Assembly (NCBI GenBank): GCA_964035545.1
Contig: CAXIUT010000205.1
Coordinates: 1,007-65,006 of the forward strand
From: Bugula neritina
Taxonomy: Eukaryota; Animalia; Bryozoa
Direction: 5' to 3'
Length of the DNA stretch: 64,000 nt
In this document: in pieces, positions 3,136 to 56,544 of the stretch
How positions within the stretch are numbered: position 1 is the first letter of the stretch
Layout: every line of letters starts with the position of its first letter
Notes under the pieces: model-generated
Told to the model about the DNA's origin: nothing
Seen by the model: only the letters and a program-made list of their open reading frames with translations
Database searches by the model: none
Position numbers and translations under genes: made by a program

Positions 3136-4710
3136 ATGATGCTGCATTTATTTAAAACAAAACAAGTAGAAACAAAGAACGAATATATAGAGGGGTGATG
3201 TCGACTTATAGTCTCTAATGGTACCACATCTAGAGAAACAACTGAGCCTAATGAAATTTTAAACAACACAAAACGTAATGTATTTAACAATAAAGCTAAA
3301 GGACTTTTTAGAAGAACAGAGGTAATATTCAAGGCTAATAGATACTATTCTACATCTACTCACCTAAAAGAGAGAAAGTTTTGTCTTGACGTGTTTTCCA
3401 AAGATTGTCTTGACTTGTTGTCCAATCTAACAAATAATCTTGTAACACAGAAGAGATTATTTGTTAGAGGTACTTCTAATTTTAATTATTTTAATTATTC
3501 TTATAAATCGAATAGGTATTTTAAATGAAATAGCTTATCTTATGAAAAAATGATTAAACTATTTTCTTATGAATTTAAAGAACTTAATAATGCCGTGCAT
3601 ATTTTTTTCTTTTCTTCTCTTTTAATTAAATATTTAGTATGTATATCTAAAAATAAAATATTTTTATTATTCAATGAATTTATATTTTTTAAATTAAAGA
3701 ATCTATTAAATATAATTTTTAAGAATTCTTTTAATAAGTTATTTAATTTAAATTATATAGAATATTTTTATATTTTTAATTACATCTACAAAAGAAAACA
3801 TGATTTGTTTCTGTATAAATCCGAAGTAAAGAATTTATACAATAATGAGAAAGTACTTAGCTCTTTAAAAAAGAATTTACTTAATAAATTCTTTAGTAAG
3901 TATTGATTAAGAGGTAGTTACGTACATACATTTGTAATGAAATATATGTTACGCTTTTATAGAAACTTTTCTTCTAAAGAAGGTAAATATGTAAGACGTT
4001 CTTTTAAGAGATATAGCTTTCGTAAATTATTTGAACTAAATGCGAAGAATAATTGATTGGATAACATTTATAAGCCTTCTTCTAATAACAATTTAGAAAA
4101 AAAAATATTTCGTTACAAAAGTCTTTATAAAAAATATAAGTCTTTTTATAATACTTCTAATGTATCAGTCTACCGAGAAAATGGAATGGATAAAAGCCAT
4201 TTGAAAAAAAAAATATTTCAGAAAAGATCTTTTAACAAACAAATATTTATTTATCAAATAAAAACATTATTTCACTTAAGTAAAAGTAATTTAAGAAGAA
4301 ATCTCTTTTTGAATAATATACTAAAAACAAATTTTATTTTTAAACATAATAATTTGAAAAAGACTCTTATTAAAAAGTGTTTGACTAATTGATATTGAGA
4401 GAAAACAACAAATGCTATGAAAAAAAATAAGAGATTTTTTTTTAAAAACAATACTTATTTAAAAAAAAATATGAGATATGCTTCTTATTATTTTAATTCT
4501 TTTTTTAAATATGAAATAAAAATAATAAATTATTTTTATTTATATTTAAAAAAAAGTTTATTTTATTTAAAAAGTACGGATATTTTTTCTATGTTCAAAC
4601 AGTATATTTTCATTTATAAGTTCGATTGTACAAATATTAATATAGATAATTTAAATAAATTGTCTATCAACTTTTTTTTAAATTATAACGTAAACTTCTT
4701 AAAAAGTTAA
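3136..4710 (+). CDS. orf524, unknown basic protein
   Basis: ORF-track pieces 3550, 4057 and 4417 share one frame with ATG 3136, joined only by TGA codons; ends at TAA 4710. Confidence 0.7.
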
Positions 4711-7312: not shown

Positions 7313-7393
7313 ATTACTTATGTATACTTGCTTACCTATTTTATACTTGCTTACTTGAGATCTTAAAGTTTTAAATATATATAATAATCTATT

Positions 7394-8032
7394 ATGTTAA
7401 TAAATAATAAGAATATTACTTTTTCTTTAAAAAAATATAATATACAAAATTATATATTTTTAATAATAACGATTCTAGATGCTTTGGATATAGCATTACC
7501 TAGATTCTGTTACCATGACCAATTAACTACCAGTGGTAATTGTAGAATGTGTCTTGTAGAATTAGAAGGTTCAACCGTGCCTTTAGTGTCTTGTTCTACT
7601 ATTTACACGAACAATATGGTACTATATACACATACCTCTTTTTTAAGACAAAGTCAAGAATACATAATTGAATTTATATTATTAAATCATCCTTTAGATT
7701 GTCCTATTTGTGACCAATCTGGTGAATGTGATTTACAAGATATATCTTTAATATTTGGATCTGATAAAAGTAGATTATATCATGTCAAGAAATCTATAAT
7801 TAATAAATATTTAGGTTATTTGATAAAGACAGAGATGAATAGATGCATTTATTGTACTAGATGCGTTAGGTATACTTTTGAAATAAACAATATCTATACA
7901 TTTAATACTTTAGGTAGAGGGGTATATACTGAAGTGTCCAATTATTATGGTAATAATAATTCTTTTTATACGAGCTATATAAATGGTAATGTTATTGATT
8001 TATGTCCAGTGTCTACTATAATTAATTATTAG
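7394..8032 (+). CDS. nad11: NADH dehydrogenase subunit 11, N-terminal Fe-S part (nad11a)
   Basis: PRFCYH..L...GNCRMCLVE, NHPLDCPICDQSGECDLQD, RCIYCTRCVR, GNVIDLCPV, then TAG. Confidence 0.96.
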   Translation: MLINNKNITFSLKKYNIQNYIFLIITILDALDIALPRFCYHDQLTTSGNCRMCLVELEGSTVPLVSCSTIYTNNMVLYTHTSFLRQSQEYIIEFILLNHPLDCPICDQSGECDLQDISLIFGSDKSRLYHVKKSIINKYLGYLIKTEMNRCIYCTRCVRYTFEINNIYTFNTLGRGVYTEVSNYYGNNNSFYTSYINGNVIDLCPVSTIINY

Positions 8033-8033
8033 T

Positions 8034-9518
8034 ATGGGTGCATTATCCTCTAAACCGTATCTATTTAAAAATAAGACTTGAGAGCTCTTTAGTATAGAGT
8101 CTGTAGACATTTTTGATAGTCTCTGTAATAAAATACAGTTTCATGTTAAAGATAACGTTATCGAGAGGGTGTTACCTAGAATAACATTACATTTAAGTGA
8201 TGATTGGATAACTGATAAAATACGCTTTTGTTATGATGGTTTTTATAAGCAACGATTATCATTACCTGGGTATAACTATAAAAGACTATGTGTTGGTATT
8301 TCTTATTTATGACATTTAATGCTGTGTAGTTGACATTTGTGCTTTGATAAAATAAAAATAAGTTATTATTTATACTTTAATAAGAGTATGAATAATTACC
8401 ATTTTTATAGTGGGCACTTAATAGATACTTTTAGTTTATATTCGTTAAAACAACTATCTTCTTTTATTGGGTTTCATAATATCAATATAAATTTGAACTT
8501 TAATATCGATTTGAGGAAATATTTTATTTTTAATAATAATATTAATAATTTTGATTCTAATAATCTTTTCTTAATATTAGGTACTAATCCTAAAGTAGAC
8601 ACACCTATTTTGAACATTAAAATCAGGAAAATAAAATTTTATTTCAATAAAAAAATAGACATTTTTTATATAGGAAATAAAATGCTTATTAATTATTCTA
8701 TGATACATTTAGGTATTACAAATAAAAGTTTTACTAGTATATTATTAGGTAAAAGTTTCTCTTGTTATAGTATTCTTAAAGTTTGTAACATACTTTGTTT
8801 GTTTAGTATAAGTTTTAATTTAATAAAAAGTCATCTTATGTTGTTAACGTTAGATAACCTTTCTTTTTTTTTAAAAAAACAGAACTTCATTTATAACTAT
8901 ATAACATTGTTTTCAAGTGATGTATCTATATATGAATTAGGTCTGAATTCGTATTACTACTCTAATAATTTATATATTAATAGATCTAAATTGAATTGAA
9001 TATACTTATTAGGAGTAGATTATACGAAGCATATGTTTTTCAAATTAAAAAAAGTTTTCTGTATATATCATGGACATCATGGTGATAATGGTATTTCTAG
9101 TTCGAATATTGTTATTCCTAGTAAAATGTTTATTGAAAATACAAGTTATTTTCTAAACTGTGAGGGACGTTTTTTTATTACAAATACTATTATCAATAGC
9201 GAGAAAAAAGAAAATTCGAATGAATCTATTTTATATAATTTATTTACTTATATAAGTAAGAAGTTAATTAAATACATAAAATTAAAAAACTTATTTACAG
9301 TGTTTTTTTATAAGTTACCTGTTTTTTTTACAAAATATAAATTTGTTTTAAAAAAGCATATAAAATGTTTTTTTAATTTACCTAATAAGTTGTTTAAGTG
9401 TTTTTTTTTTAATAATGTTTGAAATTACTATAATTTAGACGTAATAAGCAAGAATTCTTTTTACTTATCTTTTATACGTAATACAAACTTTTTTATTTAT
9501 AATTTCATACGTGTCTAA
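8034..9518 (+). CDS. nad11: NADH dehydrogenase subunit 11, C-terminal part (nad11b, 494 aa)
   Basis: Starts M-GALSSKPY..K..(W)EL, continuing CPV-GALTSKPY; also RVLPR...WITDKIRFCYDG, YHGHHGD, NCEGR; ends at TAA 9518. Confidence 0.9.
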
Positions 9519-10281: not shown

Positions 10282-10447
10282 TATTTAAAACTGTTTATAC
10301 GATTATTCTTATATTTCCGATGATTATTATACGGTATCTGAAATAAAGCACAATAAGCTTATAAATATAAGCGTTACTTTCTAACTGAAACACAAAATAG
10401 GGATACACTTGAGTACCTGTTTTTTAGTTGAGACTTTAAATTACGAA

Positions 10448-11260
10448 ATGAATTATAAATTAGCTAATGACCTTCGTTTGAGATATTTTAAAATACATAA
10501 AATTTGTAAGTCGATTGAACTAGTGACCTTATCGTTATTACATCTTTACAAAAAAAAACAAGAAACGGTCTTTTTTATAATTAGATTACTAAGCTGTTCT
10601 AATATATTACCTTTACAAATATCCAACTTTGTAAGTTTAAAATATTTATTAGTACCTTTTTTAACAGACAAAAGTTGTAGTGGTATACTTAATCATTCAG
10701 TGTGGCACAAATCTAAAAACATATTTGACTTTTTTAATTATAAAAATATAATAGTACATATACATGGTACGAGTTTAAAATTTAAAAAATATATAAATCT
10801 TTTTTCTTTAAATAAATACAGTATAGGTAATATTTTATTTTTATCAGATGAGAGTGTAAGTTATTATATGTCTTATGTCTTATTTAAATCAGTAATGCAT
10901 TTAAAGTACAGTCTATTTATTTTAATATTTAATGAGTGTTTAAACATCTATAGTCAATCGACAAATTATTATATTTTTTTGTCTTTATCTTTGTTTTTAA
11001 ATATAATTATATTAGATAGATTTTTTTTATTAAGCAATAAAAAAATTTTAAAAAACTTATATTTTTATATAAACACTATAACGTTGTTAGATCTATTACA
11101 AAATAATTGGTTTAGTGAGTTAGGCAGCAGAGCTACTTCAATGAAAAATTCTATTACCAATTCCAAAGAAAATCTGGATCGTTATACTTTGTTATATAAC
11201 CGTTTTAGACAATCTAAAATAACTAATGAAATAATTGAGATCATATCTTCTTTATTATAA
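10448..11260 (+). CDS. atp3: ATP synthase F1 gamma subunit
   Basis: N-terminal LRLRYFKIHKICKSIELV, TDKSCSG.LN, and C-terminal SELGSRATSMKNSITN...LLYNRFRQSKITNEIIEIISS. Confidence 0.93.
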   Translation: MNYKLANDLRLRYFKIHKICKSIELVTLSLLHLYKKKQETVFFIIRLLSCSNILPLQISNFVSLKYLLVPFLTDKSCSGILNHSVWHKSKNIFDFFNYKNIIVHIHGTSLKFKKYINLFSLNKYSIGNILFLSDESVSYYMSYVLFKSVMHLKYSLFILIFNECLNIYSQSTNYYIFLSLSLFLNIIILDRFFLLSNKKILKNLYFYINTITLLDLLQNNWFSELGSRATSMKNSITNSKENLDRYTLLYNRFRQSKITNEIIEIISSLL

Positions 11261-12065: not shown

Positions 12066-13229
<1,164 letters not shown>

Positions 13230-15188
13230 GGTTTCGCTGATTCCGGAAAAACTTGTTTTCCTATTACTGATCTAATAAAGGAAATTAATATGTATATAAG
13301 GCTCAAATTTGTCTTACAAGTATTATATGTATTAACGGAGGTTGCTACTATAATTTACATGAACGGTCACATAATGAACTTGTCTCTTATGTGTTTAGGT
13401 ATGACCCCCTTGAGCGTGTGTTTTTACTTTCATATACACCTTTTTATGATAAGAACTAATTTTTGTTATAAATCGAAATATAAAGTGACAGTACATAAAG
13501 TACTCATAGACTATGTAGTTAGTTTAAATCGATCAGTAGTGCTTTTTATATATAAATATATAGGGGTGAACTACGATAGTAGCAGACTCAATACAAAGGT
13601 GAGTTTTTTTGCAGGGCAGCTTTATAAAAATATAAATAAAGAAATACAATGAATTGATTTCTTTCTCTTGAGAAAACTTATTTATTTTTTTATATTGAGA
13701 ATATATGCGATGGACTGAGACGTATTAACAATATTGTCGAATAAGATTTTTTTAATTTTTTTAAAGATTAATTCTTATTTCCTTAGTGTATATAGCGGGT
13801 ATAATATAGCTTCAATAGTTTGTTTCAGAAGACGTGATTTTTTCATTGATGAAAAGTTTAACAATGATAAGTTATCATCTATTATAAACACTCACATATC
13901 TAATAATACATGACCTATGAAAGATAGTTTCGTCAGTTCTAGAATTAGATTATTTATTATTGCTTTGAAGAGTCATATAGCGGTATTAACAAGGCAAGAT
14001 TTGGTTAAAGAGAGAATATCTTTAAGTAATTACTATTCCTTTCATTTATATAATAGATTGTACTCTATACAATCTATTAAAAAGACTAGCCACATTAACG
14101 ATGAAGAGTGCTTAAATTTGTTAAATAAAACAAGATATATTCATTTTATAAAATACAATGTACAACTAGGTATTGTTAATATTATAGATCTAGTTTTGCA
14201 GAAGATGCTTCTTAACATCATAGAACCTTTTTACGAAGCATCTTTTAAAAAAATAGCAAACCACGCGTTTTTCTGTGTTAGCTCTGCTGTACAGAAAGTG
14301 TTTGAGTTATTAGGAGAGACGAACAAGGTTTTTATACATTTAGATCTACGTGATAGCTTTAATAGTATTTCTAGAAAGCGTTTATTAGGTATATGAGTAC
14401 CTACACCTTTTAAAAAAGCAGTGATATATTGGTTTCACTCATCTCTAAATGTGCCTTCTCATTATAAAAAAAGTAATCTAGGTCCACTTTTTTGTAGTAT
14501 ACTGTTACAAAAAATATCCAAAAGTGTTTATAAAGAATCTCCTTATTTTCACTCAATAGGTGTGAAAAGCCCTTATACACATTGCATTTATTGTGCAGAG
14601 TCTTTAACACTGATATTTAATGTAGGGTGTAAATATGTGGTATTAAAAAAAACTTACGAGTATCTCGATCGGCTTTTTTTAAAAAAAACTACTATATCTC
14701 TTATCAGAGATAGGACAACTGTCTTTTCTAATTGGAGTAAAAGCCTAAAAATAAATTATTTAGGCTTTACTTTTAATTATAACCCGTCTTTACTTTTTGT
14801 GAATAAATCTCTATCTTTTTATCAGAGAGAGGGTACTTGCTATAAATTGAGAATATCTGTTTTAATGTCTTGTTTGAACACCCATAAATCTAAAATAAAA
14901 AAACTAATTAGAAAAAACTATCATAGTCGTGTAACGAAATTGATACGTTTGTTAAACACTATAATAAGTAGGTTTTTAACTTATTATAAGTTTTTCCCTC
15001 AATTAAGGAATGTTTTTTCATATTTAGATACCTTTGTGCATTCTAGAGTACTTATATTTTTAAAAAAAAAATATAAAAACACCCCTATTAATAAAGTGAT
15101 AAAAAAACATTTTATTATCAAGTCTTGAACTTTTACAGATGGTTTTGGGGTCAAAGCAATTCGCTTAATAAAACATAGTAAGTCTTAA
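13230..15188 (+). CDS. intron-encoded maturase with degenerate reverse transcriptase (652 codons, in frame with cox1 exon 1)
   Basis: RT-like blocks [56 protein letters not shown]. Domain-X-like [13 protein letters not shown]...FSYLD..V. The expected YADD position reads YCAES. Confidence 0.88.
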
Positions 15189-15289
15189 AAAACCTTTTTA
15201 TATCTTTTTTTTGTTTTAATATACTTTTTTTTAATGGTTTTTTCTCTAAATATTCAGATATTAAGAAGAATTAAATAAAACCTGACTTA

Positions 15290-15370
15290 TTCCTCTGTCT
15301 TTCTCGCAGGAATTTCTCTGTCTTTATCGCAGGGAATAGAACATGACGTTTTCCTCTGTTCTTCTCGCAG
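15290..15370 (+). repeat. three imperfect ~21-nt direct repeats upstream of atp9
   Basis: ttcctctgtctttctcgcagg (15290), tttctctgtctttatcgcagg (15313), ttcctctgttcttctcgcag (15351). Confidence 0.8.
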
Positions 15371-15442
15371 AAGCGAGTTTTTTTTCTTTTTAGAAAGAAG
15401 AAAACTTTTTTAAAAAACGACTTTTTTTTATTAAAATAACTT

Positions 15443-15661
15443 ATGGTTGCAGAATTCAAATTTTTAGGTGCAGGTATAGCAACAGTAGCTCTTTCGGGTG
15501 TAGGTAACGGTATAGGTTACATTTTCAATGGATTATTAAATGCTGTAGCAGTTAATCCAAGTCTTACTAAAGTATTGTTTAATTACGCAATTATCGGTTT
15601 TGCTTTAACTGAAGCAATTGCGTTATTTACTTTAATGATTGTTTTTTTAATTTTGTTTTAG
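15443..15661 (+). CDS. atp9: ATP synthase subunit c, nested inside the cox1 intron
   Basis: [22 protein letters not shown]...NP...[25 protein letters not shown]; 72 aa, catalytic Glu intact. Confidence 0.97.
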
Positions 15662-15929
15662 TATTGTATGGTTCTTAGTATTTAGTAATATTAAGTTATC
15701 AGATAATCCAAGATGCACTGTGAAATTCTTTCCTTCTTTGTATTATTATTTATAAATAATAGCAAGTGATAGTAAAGTGCAATTAGAACAAGTATTGTAT
15801 ATTCCAAAATATCAAGTAATACTTAGAGATATTCTTATGTAAATAATTTTCTGAAATAATATAAATATGATGTAAATATTATTTCATGCAATTTTTTATA
15901 CTTTAATTAAATGTAAAAGTACACGTAGA

Positions 15930-15963
15930 GAGCGTAGTACTAGGCGACTGGTTTGCTGTGTTC
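15930..15963 (+). ncRNA. group II intron domain V
   Basis: GAGCGTAGT-ACTAG-GCGA-CTGGT-TT-GCTGTGTTC: AGC triad, 9-bp plus 5-bp stems, 2-nt bulge, GNRA loop. Confidence 0.9.
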
Positions 15964-16010
15964 GGAGGGAGTTTAGTAAACAGATATGTTTTTGTAAGAA
16001 CTATCCCAAT

Positions 16011-17078
16011 TATGTTGTTGCTCATTTTCACTATGTATTATCAATGGGTGCTGTGTTTGCTATCTTTTCTGGTTTTTATTATTGATTTGGTAAAGTAACA
16101 GGATATCAATATTCTGAAACTTTAGGTAAATTACATTTTTGACTTACTTTTATAGGTGCTAACATAACCTTTTTTCCAATGCACGTCTTAGGGCTTTCAG
16201 GAATGCCTAGAAGAATACCCGATTATCCAGATATGTATGCAGATTTAAATATACTTTGTTCGATAGGTTCTTTGATAGCTAGTTTAGGGTTGTTGTTATG
16301 GTTCTATGTAATAATAGATGCGTTTTTTAATCAAATAAAATGTGCTAGTAATCCTTGACAGATCTATCCTTCTTATGAGGAATTTTTAATTAGAGTGTGA
16401 AAAGTGTCTAAATACTTAGATAGCTCTTTCGACTTAAATAGTACTTCTAATTACATTTCAGATAAAAATACACTAATATCTTCTTTAAAAAGTAAAAAAG
16501 TTGATCTTCAAACGTTATCTCATTTGATTTTAAAAGATAATCTATTTGATATTAGTAATGGTGTATTACATATATGAATGAGATTACATAATAGGTATAA
16601 ATATACTTTAGAATTTAATTCTAAAAGTTACAAAGTAGATACGTTAGAGTGAACACTCACATCACCTCCAGCATATCATACTTTCACTAAACCTATAAAA
16701 ATAATTATAACTGCAGAGAAGTACAATACATTTAAATTTAAAAATAATAAAAAAGCTTATATTGATTACACTTCTTCTATAGAAGGTAACTATTTTAATA
16801 GTTTTATATTTTCAGGTAATATTTTAAGTACTATTTATATGTCTTATAATAATAAAAATATAGATACCAATATAACTAAAGATTATGTTGTAAAAAAGAA
16901 AAATGTCTGCAATACATCTAAATCTAATTTATACGTTTCTTCGTATATGTACAAGTTGGACCATAGATTATTCTCTAATTTCTTAAGGAACAGAGCTATA
17001 AATTTAAGTTTTTTAAAAGATAATGAAAGATTATCTGATTTGTTCTTTAAAAAAGTATTAATTGATAGTTTAAAATAA
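16011..17078 (+). CDS. cox1: cytochrome c oxidase subunit 1, exon 2, with long C-terminal insertion and extension
   Basis: [38 protein letters not shown](W)[11 protein letters not shown]; frame open to TAA 17078. Confidence 0.95.
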
Positions 17079-17130
17079 GTCTCTTAGCAGAAAAATTCCT
17101 TTTTTTCTTTTGTTTATAAAGTTTGTTATT

Positions 17131-17191
17131 TCCGGTCTTTTGGTAAAAGTTATCATCTCAGATAGAGTGAGTTCGAATCTCATTGCCGGTC
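17131..17191 (+). pseudogene. degenerate tRNA-like element resembling the 3' half of tRNA-Met
   Basis: T-arm gtgag-ttcgaat-ctcat followed by tgccggt, partly pairing with 5' tccggt; shrunken D-arm and a 6-nt anticodon-like loop. Confidence 0.5.
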
Positions 17192-17201
17192 ATTTTGTTC
17201 T

Positions 17202-31049: not shown

Positions 31050-31120
31050 ACTCCTATAGCTTAAAGTAAAAGCAACATACTTTACATCTGTAGATAGTGG
31101 TGCGAAACCACTTGGGAGTA
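31050..31120 (+). tRNA. atypical or degenerate tRNA, identity uncertain (anticodon loop ctttaca; Val-like or UUA)
   Basis: Acceptor actccta/tgggagt, D-stem gctt/aagc, anticodon stem acata/tctgt with one mismatch, T-arm agtgg-tgcgaaa-ccact. Confidence 0.6.
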
Positions 31121-37307: not shown

Positions 37308-39410
37308 ATGTATTTACTTCCTATTTATTTTTGTATATCCTCTTTTTTATTTTCTTTTTTTTTCGGGAGATGTATTCTTAAAGAACACTTTTTATTATTA
37401 ATTATAATAAATTGTTATTTATCTTTTTTTATTTCTGTGTATATATTTAATGAAGTTTGCTTCCATCATATAAATACATATATCTTTATCTTTCCTTGAT
37501 TAAAAATAACAACTCTAAATATATATTGATCTTTTTTATTCGATCCTTTATCAGCAACCATGTTAGTGGTGATAACATCAATATCACTTTGTGCCAATCT
37601 ATATTCTATAGAATATATGTTTTATGACCCTCATAAAGTCCGATATTTCACATATTTATCTGTTTTTACATTTTCTATGCTGATGTTAGTAACATCAAAT
37701 AATGTACTTCAACTGTTTTTTGGTTGAGAGTTTGTAGGTATTTCTTCTTATTTATTAATAAACTTTTGATATAGTAGGATACAAGCAAATAAATCCTCTA
37801 TCTTAGCAGTAATGGTAAATAAAATAGGTGATATATTTTTATTATATACCTGTTTCATTTTACAAAAAACGTTTTCTAGTTTAGATTTTAATGTAATCTT
37901 TTTATGTCTGAATTCTTATGATTCTTATATAAATGTGTTCTTTTCTTGTATAGAAAATTCTATTTGTTATGAATTAATGTGGAACAATAACTGTACTACA
38001 TTAAGCTATATAGTCTTCTATAAAAACTTATTAGAAGAAATGTTCTTATATGATATTTCTAATAGTATTTCTTCTACGAATTTCTTATTTTATTCTAATT
38101 TAATATGTATTTTTGTTTTTATAGCCTCTATATGTAAATCAGCACAATTTGGTTTTCATTTTTGACTTGCAGAAGCAATGGAAGGTCCTACACCTGTATC
38201 TTCGTTATTACATGCTGCTACCATGGTGACTGCAGGTATTTTTTTAACTATAAGGATGAGCTTTTTATTTGATTATAGTACATATGTACCTATTTATATA
38301 ATCTTTCTAGGTTCAATAACCACGTTTTTTAGTTCTATCATAGGTGTCACACAAAATGATATAAAAAAAATAGTAGCTTATTCAACTTGTAGTCAACTTG
38401 GTTATATGTATTTAAGTACAGGTATTTTTGCTTATAGCAATAGCATGTTTCATTTATTTAATCATGCTTTTTTTAAAGCACTTTTATTTTTATCTTCAGG
38501 TTATTTGATTCATTCTTTATCGAATGAACAAGATCTCAGAAAGATGGGGGGTTTAATAAAACTCTTACCTTTTGGTTATTTTTCTTTACTAATTGGTTCA
38601 ATGTCTTTAATGGGAATACCTTATTTTTCAGGTTTTTTTTCTAAAGATATGATAATAGAAAATTTTTATAGTACTTTTGTAGTAGATCTAAATAATATAA
38701 ATAAATACCCTATTATTTATTTTTCTCAACTAATAGCACTAATATCTGTTGTTTTTACAATAGTATATAGTTTAAAAATAGTATTTTATGTTTTTCTTAA
38801 TAGTTATAGTGGTTTACGCTATTATATAAACAATATCCACTTCTCTACATATTATATAATATTACCTGTGTTTTTTTTAGCACTATTAAGTATGACTAGT
38901 GGTTATTTAACGAATGATTTGATGATTGGTACTGGTACGACTTTTTGGGGTAATTCAATAAATACTTCTAGTATGGTAGGCCTTTTTAGTAAAAAACATT
39001 ATTATATAATATTATTTTGTGAATTTAAAAAATATACTTACTATTTAATTTTTTTTTTTAGTATTTATTATTTAACTTTATTTATATATTTTTTTTTTTT
39101 TGTTTCTAATTTATTTAAAATAAAATACTTAAATAAGTTATTCGTACATTTAAATAATAAAGTAATTTTTTTTAATAAATTGCTTATTTCTTCTATCTTA
39201 TATTCTATCTATTATATGTCTTATAATGTCTTTTATAAATTAGTAGATAAAAAGATCTTTGATTTCTTTTCTTCATTTAGCATAATATTTTATATAAAAA
39301 ATATAACTCTATTATTAAAAAAAAAAAAATTAAATATTATATATAACCCTATAGGAAGTATAATATTTTCTTTAATATTTTTTTTTATGTTTTTTATAAT
39401 CATTATATAA
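37308..39410 (+). CDS. nad5: NADH dehydrogenase subunit 5
   Basis: G(W)EFVG.SSYLLI.F(W), NKIGD, KSAQFGFHF(W)LAEAMEGPTPVSSLLHAATMV, HAFFKALLFL. Confidence 0.98.
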
Positions 39411-39411
39411 T

Positions 39412-40164
39412 ATGTATTTCTCTCTTTTAGAGAGTAAGTTAAAGAAGTACAATAACAAACCTTCTTTAATGAGAATAAGTTTTTTTTTATTAATTGTAAT
39501 GTGAATTAATTTTTTTTTTTATTCCTTGATCACAATAACTATCTATAAGTTATTGTGTTTTAATGTGGACTACTTTATATTTAATGTATATAAATTAAAT
39601 AAAAATATTAATGTTTTTTATAGTTTAACTGGTTTTTTAGAAACTTGTTTAAGTTACAACTCGGTAGAGAGTTATAGTTATAACAGTTACTCTATAAGCA
39701 ATTGTTTAAAACCATTTAATATTTTTTATATATTAGATGTAGTCGAATTCAAATACTTATATTTAATAGATAAAGAAGATTTAAATATGAATAATAATAT
39801 AATGTTTAATAATCTTATATATTTAAATTTTTATATAAGATCAAGTAACTTCTTATGGGTAGATGTGATATCACTACAAAAAACATTGATTATTAACATA
39901 GGTGAAACCGTTTTATTTTTTTTTAGGATGTTTAACCCTACACATTTCAATTTGAAATTGATTACTATATATATAGTACATCCTAATGAAACCTCTCTGT
40001 ATTTAAATAAAATACAGTGTTTTTGTTATAATTTAATGTTTTTATATCCATTGGAGCTAATCGATTTACCAGTGTTGTTATATATTGATAGCCTTTATAT
40101 ATATTTTTATGATTTGAAGTTGTATAATACATTCTTTGTGTACTATATAACTTTCTTCAATTAA
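39412..40164 (+). CDS. cox11: cytochrome c oxidase assembly protein Cox11
   Basis: IYKLLC, GETVLFFFRMFNPT, YIVHP...YLNKIQCFCY (Cu-binding CFC), E.IDLPVLLYID. Confidence 0.9.
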
Positions 40165-50744: not shown

Positions 50745-50926
50745 GTTTTGACATCCTAATATACATCTAAAAGTTCTCAGGTTTGACCACTTTATGGGAT
50801 ACCTGCGGTATCTATCCTTTTTATATATGTTGTTAACTTCTCGTGTAGCGTGGTTACCGTGGTTACCTTAAAATCTATATAAGCATTCCCTCTTCCCTCT
50901 AATCTATATAGCCCTCCCCCTATAAT

Positions 50927-52597
50927 ATGCTAGGACGTAATGATCTGTTTATTGGAAAAATCACAAATTTGATGGATAATATAATTATCGGTAGTACCAC
51001 TGTTTCTCCCTATACAGGGGAGAAAGTTATCTTCTATAACAATGTATCTAGGTATGTTGAATGTGAAGCCTGTGTGTTCGAAATACACAATGGACGTATA
51101 AAGATGTTACTTACGAAAGGTAAGCAAGAGAACCTGTTCGTTGGTTATAGTATCTTTAGAACTAATCAAACGATGACATTGTCTTTAGATTGAAATATCT
51201 TAGGTACAATCATAACACCTTTTGGAAAAAAATTAAACTCTATTAATATAGACCTTGATGAGCATTTAAGTCTAAATTCCAATTTTTTTTCTTTCGAATA
51301 CAAAGAAATCCATGCAGAATCGCCTGATATCATTAGTAGAAAACTAGTAAGTAAACCGCTATTAACAGGTCTAAATGTAGTTGATTGCTTGATACCTGTG
51401 GGTTTTGGACAAAGACAGCTGATAATAGGTGATAATAATACGGGTAAGAGTTCGTTAGCAATAACAGTAATTCTTAATCAAAATCAATTTAACAAAGACT
51501 ATTCGTCTTTTTTAAAAAAAAAAATATTTATTCCTTTTTTTAAACCTTGTATATATGTGTCTATTGGGCAGAAACGTTCTGAGGTAGCGAGGCTTCAAGC
51601 CGTGTTACGTAATAATGATAGTAGTTGATATACTTGTATATTGTTTACTAGTTCGGATGACTTACCAGTTATTCAATATTATGCACCTTATTCTGGATGT
51701 ACTATAGGAGAATGGTTTATGTATAAAGGATATGATTGTCTACTTGTATTTGATGACCTATCACAACATTCTGTGGCTTATAGGCAAATGACCTTATTAT
51801 TACGTAGACCACCTGGTAGAGAAGCTTTCCCAGGAGACGTTTTTTTCTTACATTCACGTTTGTTAGAAAGGTCAGCTCAATTAGCGGATTATAAAGGAGA
51901 AGGTTCTTTAACATCTTTACCTATTATTGAAACTTTATGTGGTGACGTATCTTCTTATATACCTACTAATGTAATTTCTATTACAGATGGACAACTTTTT
52001 CTTTCCAAAAATTTATTTAATAGAGGGGTAATACCTGCTGTTAATTTAGGATTGTCAGTAAGTAGAGTGGGTTCGTCTGCACAATATAGCTCCATGATAA
52101 CAGTCTCAAAAACCATAAAAGCGCATTTATCATTATATAATCAATTTAAAGATGCGGAGTTATTAGGTAGCAGTTCGAATCACTTAGTAGGTAAATATAT
52201 AAAGAGAGGGCAGCGTCTAACTTTATTTTTTACGCAACCACTGTATGGTACACAAAGGTTTTTTAAACAGATAGTATACTTATATTGTTTGGGGGAGGGT
52301 TTTGCGGATGACCTAGATGTTAGACTAACGAAATTTTTTTTAGCTTCACTGTTTAATAGGGAATATAATTCTTATATAGATTTAAAGGGAACCTATATCT
52401 CATTTTTTTTGAATGATTTACACTTTGAGAATTATTTAAAGTCTTTTGGTTTAAATAAGCATCTCAAAACGTTACTATCTGACTGGTTATTATGCTTTAA
52501 AACCTTTTTTTCAAACATGGTCTTGCCTATGGTTAAAGCTTTTGAAAATCAAACTTATATCTGATCTTTAATATCAGATTATCAAGACTCTTTTTAG
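50927..52597 (+). CDS. atp1: ATP synthase F1 alpha subunit (divergent)
   Basis: PLLTGL.VVD.LIPVG.GQRQLIIGD..TGK, CIYVSIGQKRS, DDLSQHSVAYRQ..LLLRRPPGREAFPGDVFFLHSRLLER, YIPTNVISITDGQ. Confidence 0.97.
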
Positions 52598-55617: not shown

Positions 55618-55746
55618 AATTAGTCTAACTTTGGTTAGTTAGTATTATAAATAAGAATCTATTTGTGGTGTGTTTATTTTTACTATATGTCGTTTTTTTT
55701 TTTTTACTTTTTACTGGTTTAATGTTTATTTACTTAATATATAGAG

Positions 55747-56544
55747 ATGTATAATTTCACAAATTACACGGTCTTATTTTTATCAGAAATAAAAATAAGA
55801 CTTTTTTATATTTTTATGGACCTTTTTATTACTTTTTTTTTTCTAATCTGTAATTTTAATAATTTTATATTATTTTTACTACAACCATTAGAAACATTTA
55901 ATTTAGATTTAAATTATAATAATGTGAGTTGTTTGTTATATAACTTTTTAAATTTAAATTATGATGACTTTATAGACTCTGATAACCTATTGTTTTTTAA
56001 ATATAATAATTCATTTGATTTGTATACCTCTTTAGAAATAAATATATCTAATACAAATTGTTTATATTTAAAACTAATATTTTTTTTTGTAGTAATAATA
56101 ATATTACCTATAATTACATATCAAATATACTTATTTATTCTACCTAGTTTATATAAACATGAATTAAAGACAAAAGCTTTTTTATTCTTTTTTTATTATT
56201 ATATATTTTTTGTTCTAAAGTTTAATTATTTGTTTTCTACTATTCTGAACTTTAACTATAATAATTATCAAGAATTTCAAAATTATGAATTTGATATTGA
56301 ATTTATCTTTTATGATTATTTTATATTATATTTGAAAACGTTTTTTTTATTTTTATTAAACGTATATCTTTTATTTTGATATATAAATTATTTTATTAAT
56401 AAGAAGCTTTTTCATGTTTTTTATGTTTTCGTAAATATAATATTTTATACTAATTTATTTATATTTATATTGTTTTATATAAGCCTGTTTATATTTGATT
56501 ATAAAAAGCATATAGGTTTATATGAACACATAATAAAAACGTAA
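55747..56544 (+). CDS. tatC: twin-arginine translocase subunit TatC (mttB)
   Basis: LSEIKIRLFY (ELR.R-like) and LPIITYQIYLFILPSLYKHE (P...YQ.W.FI.PGLY..E-like). Confidence 0.85.

What the first reader, a model, noticed from the sequence alone, without database searches (positions are those of the whole stretch)
13230..16010. The only atp9 gene is nested inside the cox1 group II intron
Seen: cox1 breaks at HDTY|YVVAHFHY. Between the exons lie, in order and on the same strand, a maturase ORF (to 15188), an intact atp9 (15443-15661), then a canonical domain V (15930-15963), a DVI-like stem and a CCCAAT 3' end. I found no other atp9 in the 58,117-bp unit. Known: group II intron cargo sits in domain IV and is normally only the intron-encoded protein, while ATP synthase subunit c is essential and needed at high copy. 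Inference: either (a) atp9 mRNA is the excised intron or is cut from it, coupling c-ring synthesis to cox1 splicing; or (b) atp9 has its own promoter or processing sites, which would break the intron in DIV and make cox1 trans-spliced despite collinear exons. Either way, precise intron loss would delete atp9, so the intron is locked in by an essential host passenger.
Basis: partly seen in the sequence, partly recalled or inferred. Interest (0 to 1): 0.95.

Follow-up and report, generated by a model that had tools for sequence, protein, structure and literature searches.

The report
atp9 nested inside cox1 group II intron
In the compact mitochondrial genome of an uncultured marine protist, the only mitochondrial copy of the essential ATP synthase gene atp9 sits inside the self-splicing intron that interrupts cox1. 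This is a real and unusual arrangement, but how atp9 is expressed from there is still untested.

Summary
The window is a circular 58,117-bp, 24% GC mitochondrial genome in which TGA codes for Trp. cox1 is split at HDTY|YVVAHFHY by a 2,781-nt group II intron (13230-16010).

The intron has:
- a 5' ribozyme part conserved with five homologous introns at the same cox1 site in environmental mitogenomes;
- a protein ORF in frame with exon 1 that keeps the maturase X domain but has lost the RT active site and the whole D/En domain;
- a canonical domain V, and a domain VI with a bulged A.

An intact atp9 (15443-15661) lies between the maturase stop and domain V. It is under purifying selection (dN/dS 0.05-0.11) and is the only atp9 in the unit.

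None of the five homologous introns carries atp9. In relatives, atp9 lies after atp3, after cox3, before cox11, or directly downstream of cox1. The nested position is therefore derived.

Expression is untested. Metatranscriptome contigs were uninformative.

Closest precedents are cox1 of Isochrysis galbana (12 genes between the exons) and the hexacoral ND5-717 group I intron. I file it as a new variant of a known kind. The organism's nuclear genome was not available.

The parts
12066..13229 (+). cox1 exon 1, taken from the first ATG; ends ..ALHDTY
   Evidence: ORF map under code 4; exon end located; the same exon end is seen in homologs L004, L005 and L011
13230..16010 (+). Group II intron, 2,781 nt, starting GGUUUCG and ending CCCAAU
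   Evidence: homologous introns at the same cox1 site in L004, L005-L010, L011, L012 and L026
13230..13830 (+). 5' ribozyme part (domains I-III, not modelled in detail). It overlaps the in-frame ORF and includes a window-specific insert of about 63 nt at about 13424-13492.
   Evidence: Long invariant blocks in a 4-sequence alignment. A basal domain I helix (intron nt 7-10 paired with CAGC near 13624-13627) has two compensatory changes in L011. A candidate EBS2 lies at 13512-13518. No match to the Rfam D1-D4 models.
13230..15188 (+). Intron-encoded protein ORF, in frame with exon 1. The RT motifs are degenerate (YADD has become YCAE), the D/En domain is absent, and the maturase X domain is kept (about 14877-15110).
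   Evidence: Open frame of 653 codons, P about 6e-21; GIIM E 5.2e-11 and no RVT_1 hit; alignment with P0001, P0002, P0003 and P0005
15236..15271 (+). Possible out-of-frame remnant of the protein segment that follows the X domain in homologs
   Evidence: tblastn with the C-terminus of P0003, 60% identity over 15 aa, E 0.002 in an 836-nt search space. Weak evidence.
15289..15371 (+). Three direct repeats of about 22 nt, relatively G+C-rich and able to form hairpins, upstream of atp9. They occur nowhere else in the genome.
   Evidence: fold z-score -2.2; an indel difference at 15403 in contigs of marine samples
15443..15661 (+). atp9 (F-type ATP synthase subunit c), 72 aa, intact, stop codon TAG
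   Evidence: PF00137 38.5 bits; unique in the unit; 75-85% identical to about 200 environmental homologs; dN/dS 0.05-0.11
15913..15926 (+). Strand just upstream of domain V. It can form a 14-bp helix with 13414-13427, which lies in the window-specific domain I insert. Its core CACGY is conserved in all homologs.
   Evidence: Shuffle P about 0.045, so only marginal.
15930..15963 (+). Domain V: AGC triad, 2-nt bulge, GCGA tetraloop
   Evidence: Rfam alignment; compensatory changes in the distal and basal stems among homologs
15966..16007 (+). Domain VI, with bulged U16002 and A16003. A16003 is the candidate branch point, 7 nt before the last intron base.
   Evidence: Rfam alignment; CUAUCCC is invariant in all homologs
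16011..17078 (+). cox1 exon 2 (YVVAHFHY..), including a long C-terminal insertion and extension
   Evidence: the extension is shared with relative L021

Best explanation
This is a genuine, cis-arranged group II intron in cox1. It is old and immobile. Its protein has been reduced to a maturase, with the RT active site and the whole DNA-binding/endonuclease domain lost.

atp9 has been relocated, together with about 250 nt of spacer on each side, into the 3' part of domain IV. That is the structurally permissive loop that, in homologous introns, is filled by the end of the intron protein ORF. The move is derived. Relatives keep atp9 elsewhere, in two cases immediately downstream of cox1, so a short-range rearrangement is the likely origin. 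One possibility is tandem duplication of the domain V / domain VI / exon 2 / atp9 segment followed by reciprocal loss.

The inferred mechanism is as follows. Nearly all genes lie on one strand and abut or overlap, so the region is probably transcribed as part of a long polycistronic RNA. atp9 would then be translated from whatever RNA carries it: the unspliced precursor (which must be translated anyway to make the in-frame maturase), the excised intron, or its fragments. The intron would splice in cis with the help of its own maturase. Because precise intron loss would remove the only mitochondrial atp9, the intron is effectively fixed.

Shown: the anatomy, the homology, the derived position, and purifying selection on atp9. 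Inferred: co-transcription, cis-splicing, the translation route and the rearrangement path.
For: Anatomy.

Homologous introns at the same site, with the same 5' end (GGUUUCGC) and near-identical domain V and VI. In these, the distance from the protein stop to domain V is 13-20 nt in L005, L012 and L026, 227 nt in L011 and 765 nt in L004, against 741 nt here. None carries atp9.

Degeneration of the intron protein.

atp9 intact, unique and constrained. The one difference seen in marine-sample contigs, T>A at 15490, is a synonymous third-position change by my reading of the frame.

Position of atp9 in relatives:
- atp3-atp9-orf147 (L013-L018; in L018-L020 the orf145 lies upstream of atp9)
- 3' end of cox1 followed by atp9 (L021, the closest at 85% identity, and L026)
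- atp9 followed by cox11 (L022), and cox3 followed by atp9 (L024)

Compact, overlapping gene layout.

No other intron detected.

Assembly support: the stretch occurs once in the assembly. The source run holds all sampled words and has a 59-kb contig. Contigs from independent marine samples bridge the domain IV spacer into atp9 (15344-15572) with 1 mismatch.
Against: - No RNA evidence shows that cox1 is spliced at these boundaries in this organism, that atp9 is transcribed, or in what form.
- The 5' end is GGUUU, not the canonical GUGYG.
- The domain V/VI match is below Rfam's gathering score here (35.4 against 40).
- Domains I-III could not be modelled in full. EBS1 is unresolved.
- The spacers beside atp9 are among the longest non-coding stretches in the genome and carry hairpin repeats. 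These could be processing signals that cut the intron.
- No sequence trace of the proposed duplication-and-loss path was found.
- The organism's nuclear genome is unknown.
Confidence: 0.6

Rival explanations
1. Broken intron. atp9 mRNA is cut out of domain IV, or transcribed from its own start, before splicing. The two intron halves (exon 1 with domains I-III and the maturase; domains V-VI with exon 2) then assemble through base pairing and tertiary contacts, and cox1 is joined in a trans-like reaction even though the exons are collinear.
For: - Domain IV breaks are tolerated in known trans-spliced group II introns (Diphylleia cox1, PMC4779616). In Isochrysis cox1, 12 genes lie between the exons and trans-splicing was inferred (PMC9551565).
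- The spacers around atp9 are unusually long and contain hairpin repeats.
- A window-specific insert in domain I can form a 14-bp helix with the strand just upstream of domain V. This would help hold two halves together.
Against: - The helix is only marginally above chance, P about 0.045.
- The exons are collinear, on the same strand and only 2.8 kb apart.
- No tRNA or other known punctuation flanks atp9.
- Overlapping genes elsewhere show that this genome does not need cleavage between cistrons.
- No RNA ends were observed.
Confidence: 0.22
2. Strict coupling. The excised intron itself is the functional atp9 mRNA, so synthesis of subunit c depends on, and is timed by, cox1 splicing.
For: Excised group II introns are stable RNPs bound by their maturase. 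atp9 has no recognisable promoter or processing site of its own. One intron is released for each spliced cox1 mRNA.
Against: Nothing prevents translation from the precursor. A lariat RNP bound by maturase may be a poor template. Subunit c is needed in many more copies than Cox1. There are no RNA data.
Confidence: 0.1
3. The nested atp9 is a redundant or decaying copy and the working gene is nuclear, or the adjacency is an assembly artefact.
For: The nuclear genome of the owner is not available. The assembly is a mixture of organisms.
Against: - The ORF is intact, the C-terminal transmembrane helix is near-identical to that of relatives, and dN/dS is 0.05-0.11.
- All relatives sampled keep atp9 in the mitochondrial DNA.
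- The stretch is single-copy in the assembly.
- An independent marine sample has the spacer-atp9 junction.
- The contig is longer than one unit and closes on itself exactly.
Confidence: 0.06

Closest known systems
Mitochondrial ORF-containing group II introns of cox1, with the protein in frame with the upstream exon (yeast aI1/aI2 type; from my own knowledge), and the environmental homologs found here (L004, L005-L010, L011, L012, L026)
   Same: Same cox1 insertion site (HDTY|Y). Same 5' end. Near-identical domains V and VI. Protein ORF fused in frame to exon 1 and carrying the X domain.
   Different: The homologs have an intact RT (YADD), and most have the D/En domain. Their ORF ends 13-20 nt before domain V in three of the five. 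None carries atp9. Here the RT and En functions are lost, and 741 nt including atp9 occupy that space.
cox1 of Isochrysis galbana (haptophyte): two exons with 12 genes between them and a group II domain V fragment next to exon b; trans-splicing was inferred (PMC9551565)
   Same: Host genes lie between the two halves of a cox1 group II intron, in a genome where all genes share one strand. The authors explain it by high rearrangement rates.
   Different: There, 12 genes and several kb separate the halves, no intron protein is present, and splicing was verified by RNA-seq. Here there is a single gene, a retained maturase and a 2.8-kb intron that can plausibly splice in cis, but no RNA proof.
Hexacoral / corallimorpharian ND5-717 group I intron with mitochondrial genes embedded in P8 (PMC6545197)
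   Same: Essential mitochondrial genes are nested in a peripheral, permissive loop of a self-splicing intron. The intron cannot be lost without relocating them.
   Different: It is a group I intron, not group II. It holds two to nearly all mitochondrial genes. [quoted passage not shown]
Trans-spliced group II introns broken in domain IV (Diphylleia rotans cox1, PMC4779616; plant nad1/nad2/nad5 and Chlamydomonas psaA as reviewed in PMC8393795)
   Same: Domain IV is the place where unrelated sequence can intervene without destroying the ribozyme.
   Different: In those cases the halves lie at separate loci and are transcribed independently. Here they are collinear and contiguous.

Membership tests
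Group II intron | Domain V: a 34-nt hairpin with the AGC catalytic triad, a 2-nt bulge and a GNRA loop | tested here: met
   15930-15963 has AGC at positions 2-4, a UU bulge and a GCGA loop. Stem changes among homologs are compensatory.
Group II intron | Domain VI with a bulged adenosine 7-8 nt upstream of the 3' splice site, and an intron ending in AY | tested here: met
   The Rfam alignment places the bulged UA at 16002-16003. The intron ends in AU at 16010, directly before YVVAHFHY.
Group II intron | Score at or above the Rfam RF00029 gathering threshold | tested here: not met
   35.4 bits against 40. The hit is not listed in the whole-genome scan. The homolog in L004 reaches 41.5 bits.
Group II intron | Canonical 5' end GUGYG | tested here: not met
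   The 5' end is GGUUUCG. It is invariant in all four homologs that have a 5' end, so it is a feature of this intron family rather than decay.
Group II intron | Domains I-III with EBS1/EBS2 pairing to the 5' exon | tested here: inconclusive
   Sequence blocks are strongly conserved, and one basal helix has two compensatory changes. An EBS2-like motif pairs with exon positions -15 to -9 in W, L005 and L011, and in 5 of 6 positions in L004. The only EBS1 candidate is at 13599-13604 and has no counterpart in homologs. No Rfam D1-D4 model matched.
Group II intron | Intron-encoded RT/maturase protein in domain IV | tested here: met
   X/GIIM domain at E 5.2e-11. 32-47% identity to homologous intron proteins that do carry RVT_1. 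The RT motifs here are degenerate, with no RVT_1 hit and YADD changed to YCAE.
Group II intron | Splicing at the predicted boundaries seen in RNA | tested here: inconclusive
   A 13229->16011 joint exists in one metatranscriptome and one possibly identical seawater run, but at depth 138 against 2-5 for this organism's own contigs, at 90% likeness and with only 26 nt on one side. It most likely comes from other organisms.
F-type ATP synthase subunit c (atp9, PF00137) | Pfam score above the cut-off, and a two-helix hairpin with the conserved carboxylate in helix 2 | tested here: met
   38.5 bits against 24. 72 aa with a glycine-rich first helix and Glu in ..[10 protein letters not shown].., the same as in relatives.
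F-type ATP synthase subunit c (atp9, PF00137) | Evolving as a functional gene | tested here: met
   dN/dS is 0.05-0.11 against six relatives. dS is near saturation.
Trans-spliced (domain IV-broken) group II intron | Intron halves encoded at separate loci or strands and transcribed independently | tested here: not met
   At the DNA level both halves are collinear on the + strand and 2.8 kb apart in one contig. Independent transcription could not be tested.

The most novel reading that the evidence does not exclude
The excised cox1 intron is itself the atp9 messenger, or its obligatory precursor. Synthesis of the ATP synthase c-ring would then be mechanistically coupled to cox1 splicing, and the essential passenger would hold the selfish intron in place. 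This would be the first cis-spliced group II intron shown to work as a carrier of a housekeeping gene, and a living intermediate on the path from cis- to trans-splicing.
Probability: 0.2. Interest if true: 0.8.

Novelty: new variant of a known kind. Interest (0 to 1): 0.58.

Why it matters
Group II introns normally carry only their own protein. Host genes between intron halves have so far been described mainly in clearly trans-spliced genes (Diphylleia, Isochrysis, plants) or in group I introns (hexacoral ND5-717).

This locus is different in three ways:
- It has one essential OXPHOS gene in domain IV.
- It still has a maturase.
- Its exons are collinear and only 2.8 kb apart.

It therefore looks like an early, still cis-competent stage of the process that leads to fragmented, trans-spliced genes. 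It offers a natural test of how much foreign, translated sequence domain IV tolerates. It also lets one ask whether an excised intron can serve as an mRNA, and whether a host gene can protect an immobile intron from loss.

The comparative data add two side points. The intron family is mobile across distinct protist lineages. And atp9 changes place often in this clade of gene-rich mitogenomes that encode atp3 and cox11.

Tried and rejected
- **Word-index protein search** with the maturase piece found nothing. The exhaustive HMMER search was needed.
- **Read laying.**
  - The source run X1 gave only short chance matches, because its long contig was filtered out.
  - RNA runs X2 and X3 cover intron and exons alike at 2-5x, so they cannot separate RNA from contaminating DNA or spliced from unspliced RNA.
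  - The 13229->16011 joint was rejected as evidence because of its depth, its likeness threshold and its short side.
  - X2 and X4 share the same contigs and may be one data set filed twice.
- **Traces of the relocation path.** Remnants of cox1 exon 2 or of the En domain were sought in the spacers around atp9, and remnants of atp9 after cox1. Only low-complexity AT-rich matches appeared. The one exception is a weak remnant of the segment after the X domain.
- **Spacer homology with relatives:** none convincing.
- **The three upstream repeats** occur nowhere else in the genome, so they are not a general promoter or processing motif.
- **Full secondary-structure modelling of domains I-III.** RNAalifold on four sequences recovers domains V and VI and a few helices only.
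- **The 14-bp long-range helix** is only marginal, P about 0.045.
- **Metagenome scan for close relatives** of this maturase found none. The profile scan found one more distant homolog, L026, with no cargo.
- **Names for atp9 relatives.** Cluster look-up gave no organism names. One relative is mislabelled as archaeal.
- **Literature searches** for atp9 inside an intron found no report.
- **ORF173 in domain IV of L004** has no detectable relatives.
- **Contig C1.** I did not pursue the animal-type contig C1 beyond reading one locus. It is not human-like; its subunit c sequence differs from the human one as I remember it.
Full report
**What the window is.** The first 5,883 bases recur exactly at the end, so the window is a circular unit of 58,117 bp with 24% G+C. 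Reading frames are open only if TGA codes for Trp.

The unit carries:
- unsplit rRNA genes and about 19 tRNA genes, most of them in one cluster;
- nad7, nad9 and a nad11-like pair of ORFs (identified by eye; nad9 by Pfam);
- many ribosomal protein genes;
- atp1, atp3, cox11 and tatC.

That gene set matches what has been described for heterolobosean mitochondria (PMC5421314, PMC7194472). I did not test this placement with a phylogeny.

The window is contig C214 of a 216-Mb, 321-contig assembly that is clearly a mixture. Contig C1 carries the last exon of an animal-type nuclear subunit c gene. Contig C73 is a second, unrelated mitochondrial genome with its own atp9. The owner of this mitochondrion is therefore a protist sequenced along with an animal. 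Near-identical contigs turn up in marine metatranscriptomes and seawater metagenomes from other studies.

**Checking the observation.** cox1 exon 1 ends at 13229 (..ALHDTY) and exon 2 begins at 16011 (YVVAHFHY..). The reading frame of exon 1 runs on for 653 more codons to a stop at 15186-15188. The chance of this is about 6e-21 given the base composition.

The distal part of this ORF has a group II maturase (GIIM) domain, E 5.2e-11, but no reverse transcriptase hit. atp9 at 15443-15661 is intact and matches PF00137.

Rfam's group II model matches 15928-16010 and ends on the last intron base. Domain V has the AGC triad, a 2-nt bulge and a GCGA loop. Domain VI has a bulged A at 16003. The score of 35.4 bits is below the gathering score of 40.

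No second atp9 exists in the unit. The region is single-copy in the assembly.

**Is it really an intron?** The strongest evidence is comparative. An exhaustive HMMER search with the maturase piece found 13 proteins. The best of them are fusions of the cox1 exon to an intron protein, and they start in the same way after HDTY (GFADSG..). Their contigs (L004, L005-L010, L011, L012), and L026 from a profile scan, hold homologous introns at the same cox1 site.

These homologs share:
- an identical 5' end, GGUUUCGC;
- long invariant blocks across the first 600 nt or so;
- near-identical domains V and VI.

Domain V shows compensatory changes between homologs. A basal domain I helix (intron nt 7-10 paired with CAGC near 13624) has two compensatory changes in L011. 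The element in L004 passes Rfam's threshold at 41.5 bits.

The non-canonical 5' end is therefore a feature of this intron family, not a sign of decay. I could not model domains I-III in full. An EBS2-like motif is conserved, but EBS1 is unresolved.

**What is special here.** In three of the five homologs the intron protein has an intact RT (YADD) and an HNH endonuclease, and its ORF ends 13-20 nt before domain V. In L011 the gap is 227 nt. In L004 it is 765 nt and holds an unrelated 173-aa ORF. None of them has atp9.

In the window the protein has lost RT motif 1. Motifs 3 and 4 are degenerate, YADD has become YCAE, and the entire D/En domain is missing. The X domain is kept and the frame stays open. 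In place of the lost 3' coding part are 741 nt:
- a 254-nt spacer with three hairpin-forming 22-nt repeats that are unique in the genome;
- atp9;
- a 268-nt spacer.

A weak, out-of-frame remnant of the segment that follows the X domain may survive at 15236-15271. No other intron is detectable in the genome.

**Where atp9 came from.** About 200 environmental proteins are 71-85% identical to this atp9. Their contigs show a related family of 45-60-kb mitogenomes that also encode atp3 and cox11.

In these relatives atp9 lies:
- between atp3 and orf147/rps19 (L013-L017; in L018-L020 the orf145 lies upstream of atp9);
- directly after the 3' end of cox1 (L021, the closest relative at 85% identity, which shares the unusual cox1 C-terminal extension);
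- before cox11 (L022);
- after cox3 (L024).

The more distant L026 also has cox1 followed by atp9, with the cargo-free intron upstream. So atp9 moves often in this group, and the nested position is derived.

An ancestor with the order cox1-atp9 would need only a short-range rearrangement. One candidate is duplication of the domain V / domain VI / exon 2 / atp9 segment followed by reciprocal losses. I found no sequence trace of that path, so it remains inference.

**Is the nested atp9 functional?** It is intact. Its second helix is identical or nearly so to that of relatives and includes the carboxylate. dN/dS against six relatives is 0.05-0.11, with dS near saturation. The one difference seen in marine-sample contigs, T>A at 15490, falls on a third codon position and is synonymous by my reading.

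**How it is expressed.** This part is not shown. Contigs from two marine metatranscriptomes cover the intron, the maturase, the atp9 flank and the exons alike, at 2-5x. This cannot separate precursor RNA from DNA carry-over. The single joint 13229->16011 has depth 138 at 90% likeness with a 26-nt side, so it almost certainly comes from intronless cox1 of other organisms.

The sequence itself does say three things:
- Nearly all genes are on one strand, with median gaps of a few bases and frequent overlaps of up to 38 nt. Translation from polycistronic RNA must therefore be routine.
- The maturase is in frame with exon 1 and so must be made from the unspliced precursor.
- No tRNA or other recognisable punctuation flanks atp9.

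The most economical reading is that atp9 is co-transcribed with cox1. It would be translated from the precursor, from the excised intron, or from both, and the intron would splice in cis with its own maturase.

Three things speak for it: the spacers are unusually long, they carry hairpins, and a window-specific insert of about 63 nt in domain I can form a 14-bp helix with the strand just 5' of domain V. That helix is only marginally unexpected, P about 0.045.

**Comparison with what is known.** Searches for atp9 inside an intron found no report. The concept is not new, however.
- In Isochrysis galbana, cox1 has two exons separated by 12 genes, with a group II domain V next to exon b. [quoted passage not shown]
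- Diphylleia trans-splices a cox1 gene split into four pieces through group II introns (PMC4779616).
- Hexacoral ND5-717 is a group I intron with many mitochondrial genes in its P8 segment (PMC6545197).

The present case differs in three ways. It has a single essential gene. It keeps a maturase. And its compact, collinear layout is still compatible with ordinary cis-splicing. It looks like an early stage of the same process.

**Verdict.** The finding is real and uncommon, and would be publishable as part of a mitogenome description. It is a new variant of a known kind rather than a new category, and the mechanistic claims are untested. The lock-in argument is logically sound. It fits the intron being the only one left in the genome and immobile, but it is not demonstrated. 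Interest: 0.58.

Noticed in passing
G000 contigs C1 (L002 1492-1674) and C73 (L003 1477-1710, minus strand): The assembly is a mixture. C1 carries the last exon of an animal-type nuclear ATP synthase subunit c gene, preceded by a splice acceptor. C73 is a second, very AT-rich mitochondrial contig with a divergent atp9 (32% identity). The window's mitochondrion therefore belongs to a co-sequenced protist, not to the main organism.
   Followed up: partly
window 10385-11260, 39400-40164, 50912-52597, 55738-56544: The mitogenome encodes atp3 (ATP synthase gamma), cox11, atp1 and tatC, in addition to nad7 and nad9 and a nad11-like pair of ORFs. It reads TGA as Trp. The gene set is like that of Heterolobosea or jakobids. 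Many related 45-60-kb mitogenomes exist in soil, freshwater and marine metagenomes. One of them is labelled as an archaeal MAG protein.
   Followed up: partly
window 31050-31120: A tRNA gene (Rfam 49.6 bits) for which ARAGORN reads the anticodon UUA, which would pair with UAA. Yet 40 of 49 long ORFs end in TAA. ARAGORN called no tRNA-Trp or tRNA-Leu. Possible explanations are anticodon editing, miscalling, or a decoding oddity.
   Followed up: no
window 7388-8032 and 8022-9518: By eye, nad11 appears as two ORFs overlapping by about 8 nt: an N-terminal Fe-S part and a C-terminal part. I ran no Pfam search on either ORF. A relative (L017) has it as one product. This could be a frameshift, a split gene or a sequencing error.
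   Followed up: no
window 16360-17078; L021 2-925: cox1 has an insertion before the conserved TLEWTL..PP.H.F motif and a C-terminal extension of about 130 aa. Both are shared with the closest relative, L021.
   Followed up: partly
window 17125-17200: Just downstream of cox1 there is a tRNA-like fragment with a canonical T-arm (GTGAG TTCGAAT CTCAT) that neither ARAGORN nor Rfam calls. It could be a degenerate tRNA or one that needs editing.
   Followed up: no
L004 3117-3638 and about 3640-3760: The closest homologous intron also has extra cargo in the same domain IV position: a 173-aa hydrophobic ORF with no detectable relatives, followed by a relatively G+C-rich element of about 110 nt that looks structured. 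Domain IV of this intron family may take up foreign sequence repeatedly.
   Followed up: partly
L006 9569-10762: A mitochondrial contig that reads TGA as Trp and carries the same intron family encodes tufA (EF-Tu) downstream of cox1. This gene is rarely retained in mitochondrial DNA.
   Followed up: no
window 13424-13492: A window-specific insert of about 63 nt in domain I of the intron. Its start resembles the sequence at 13843-13862.
   Followed up: partly
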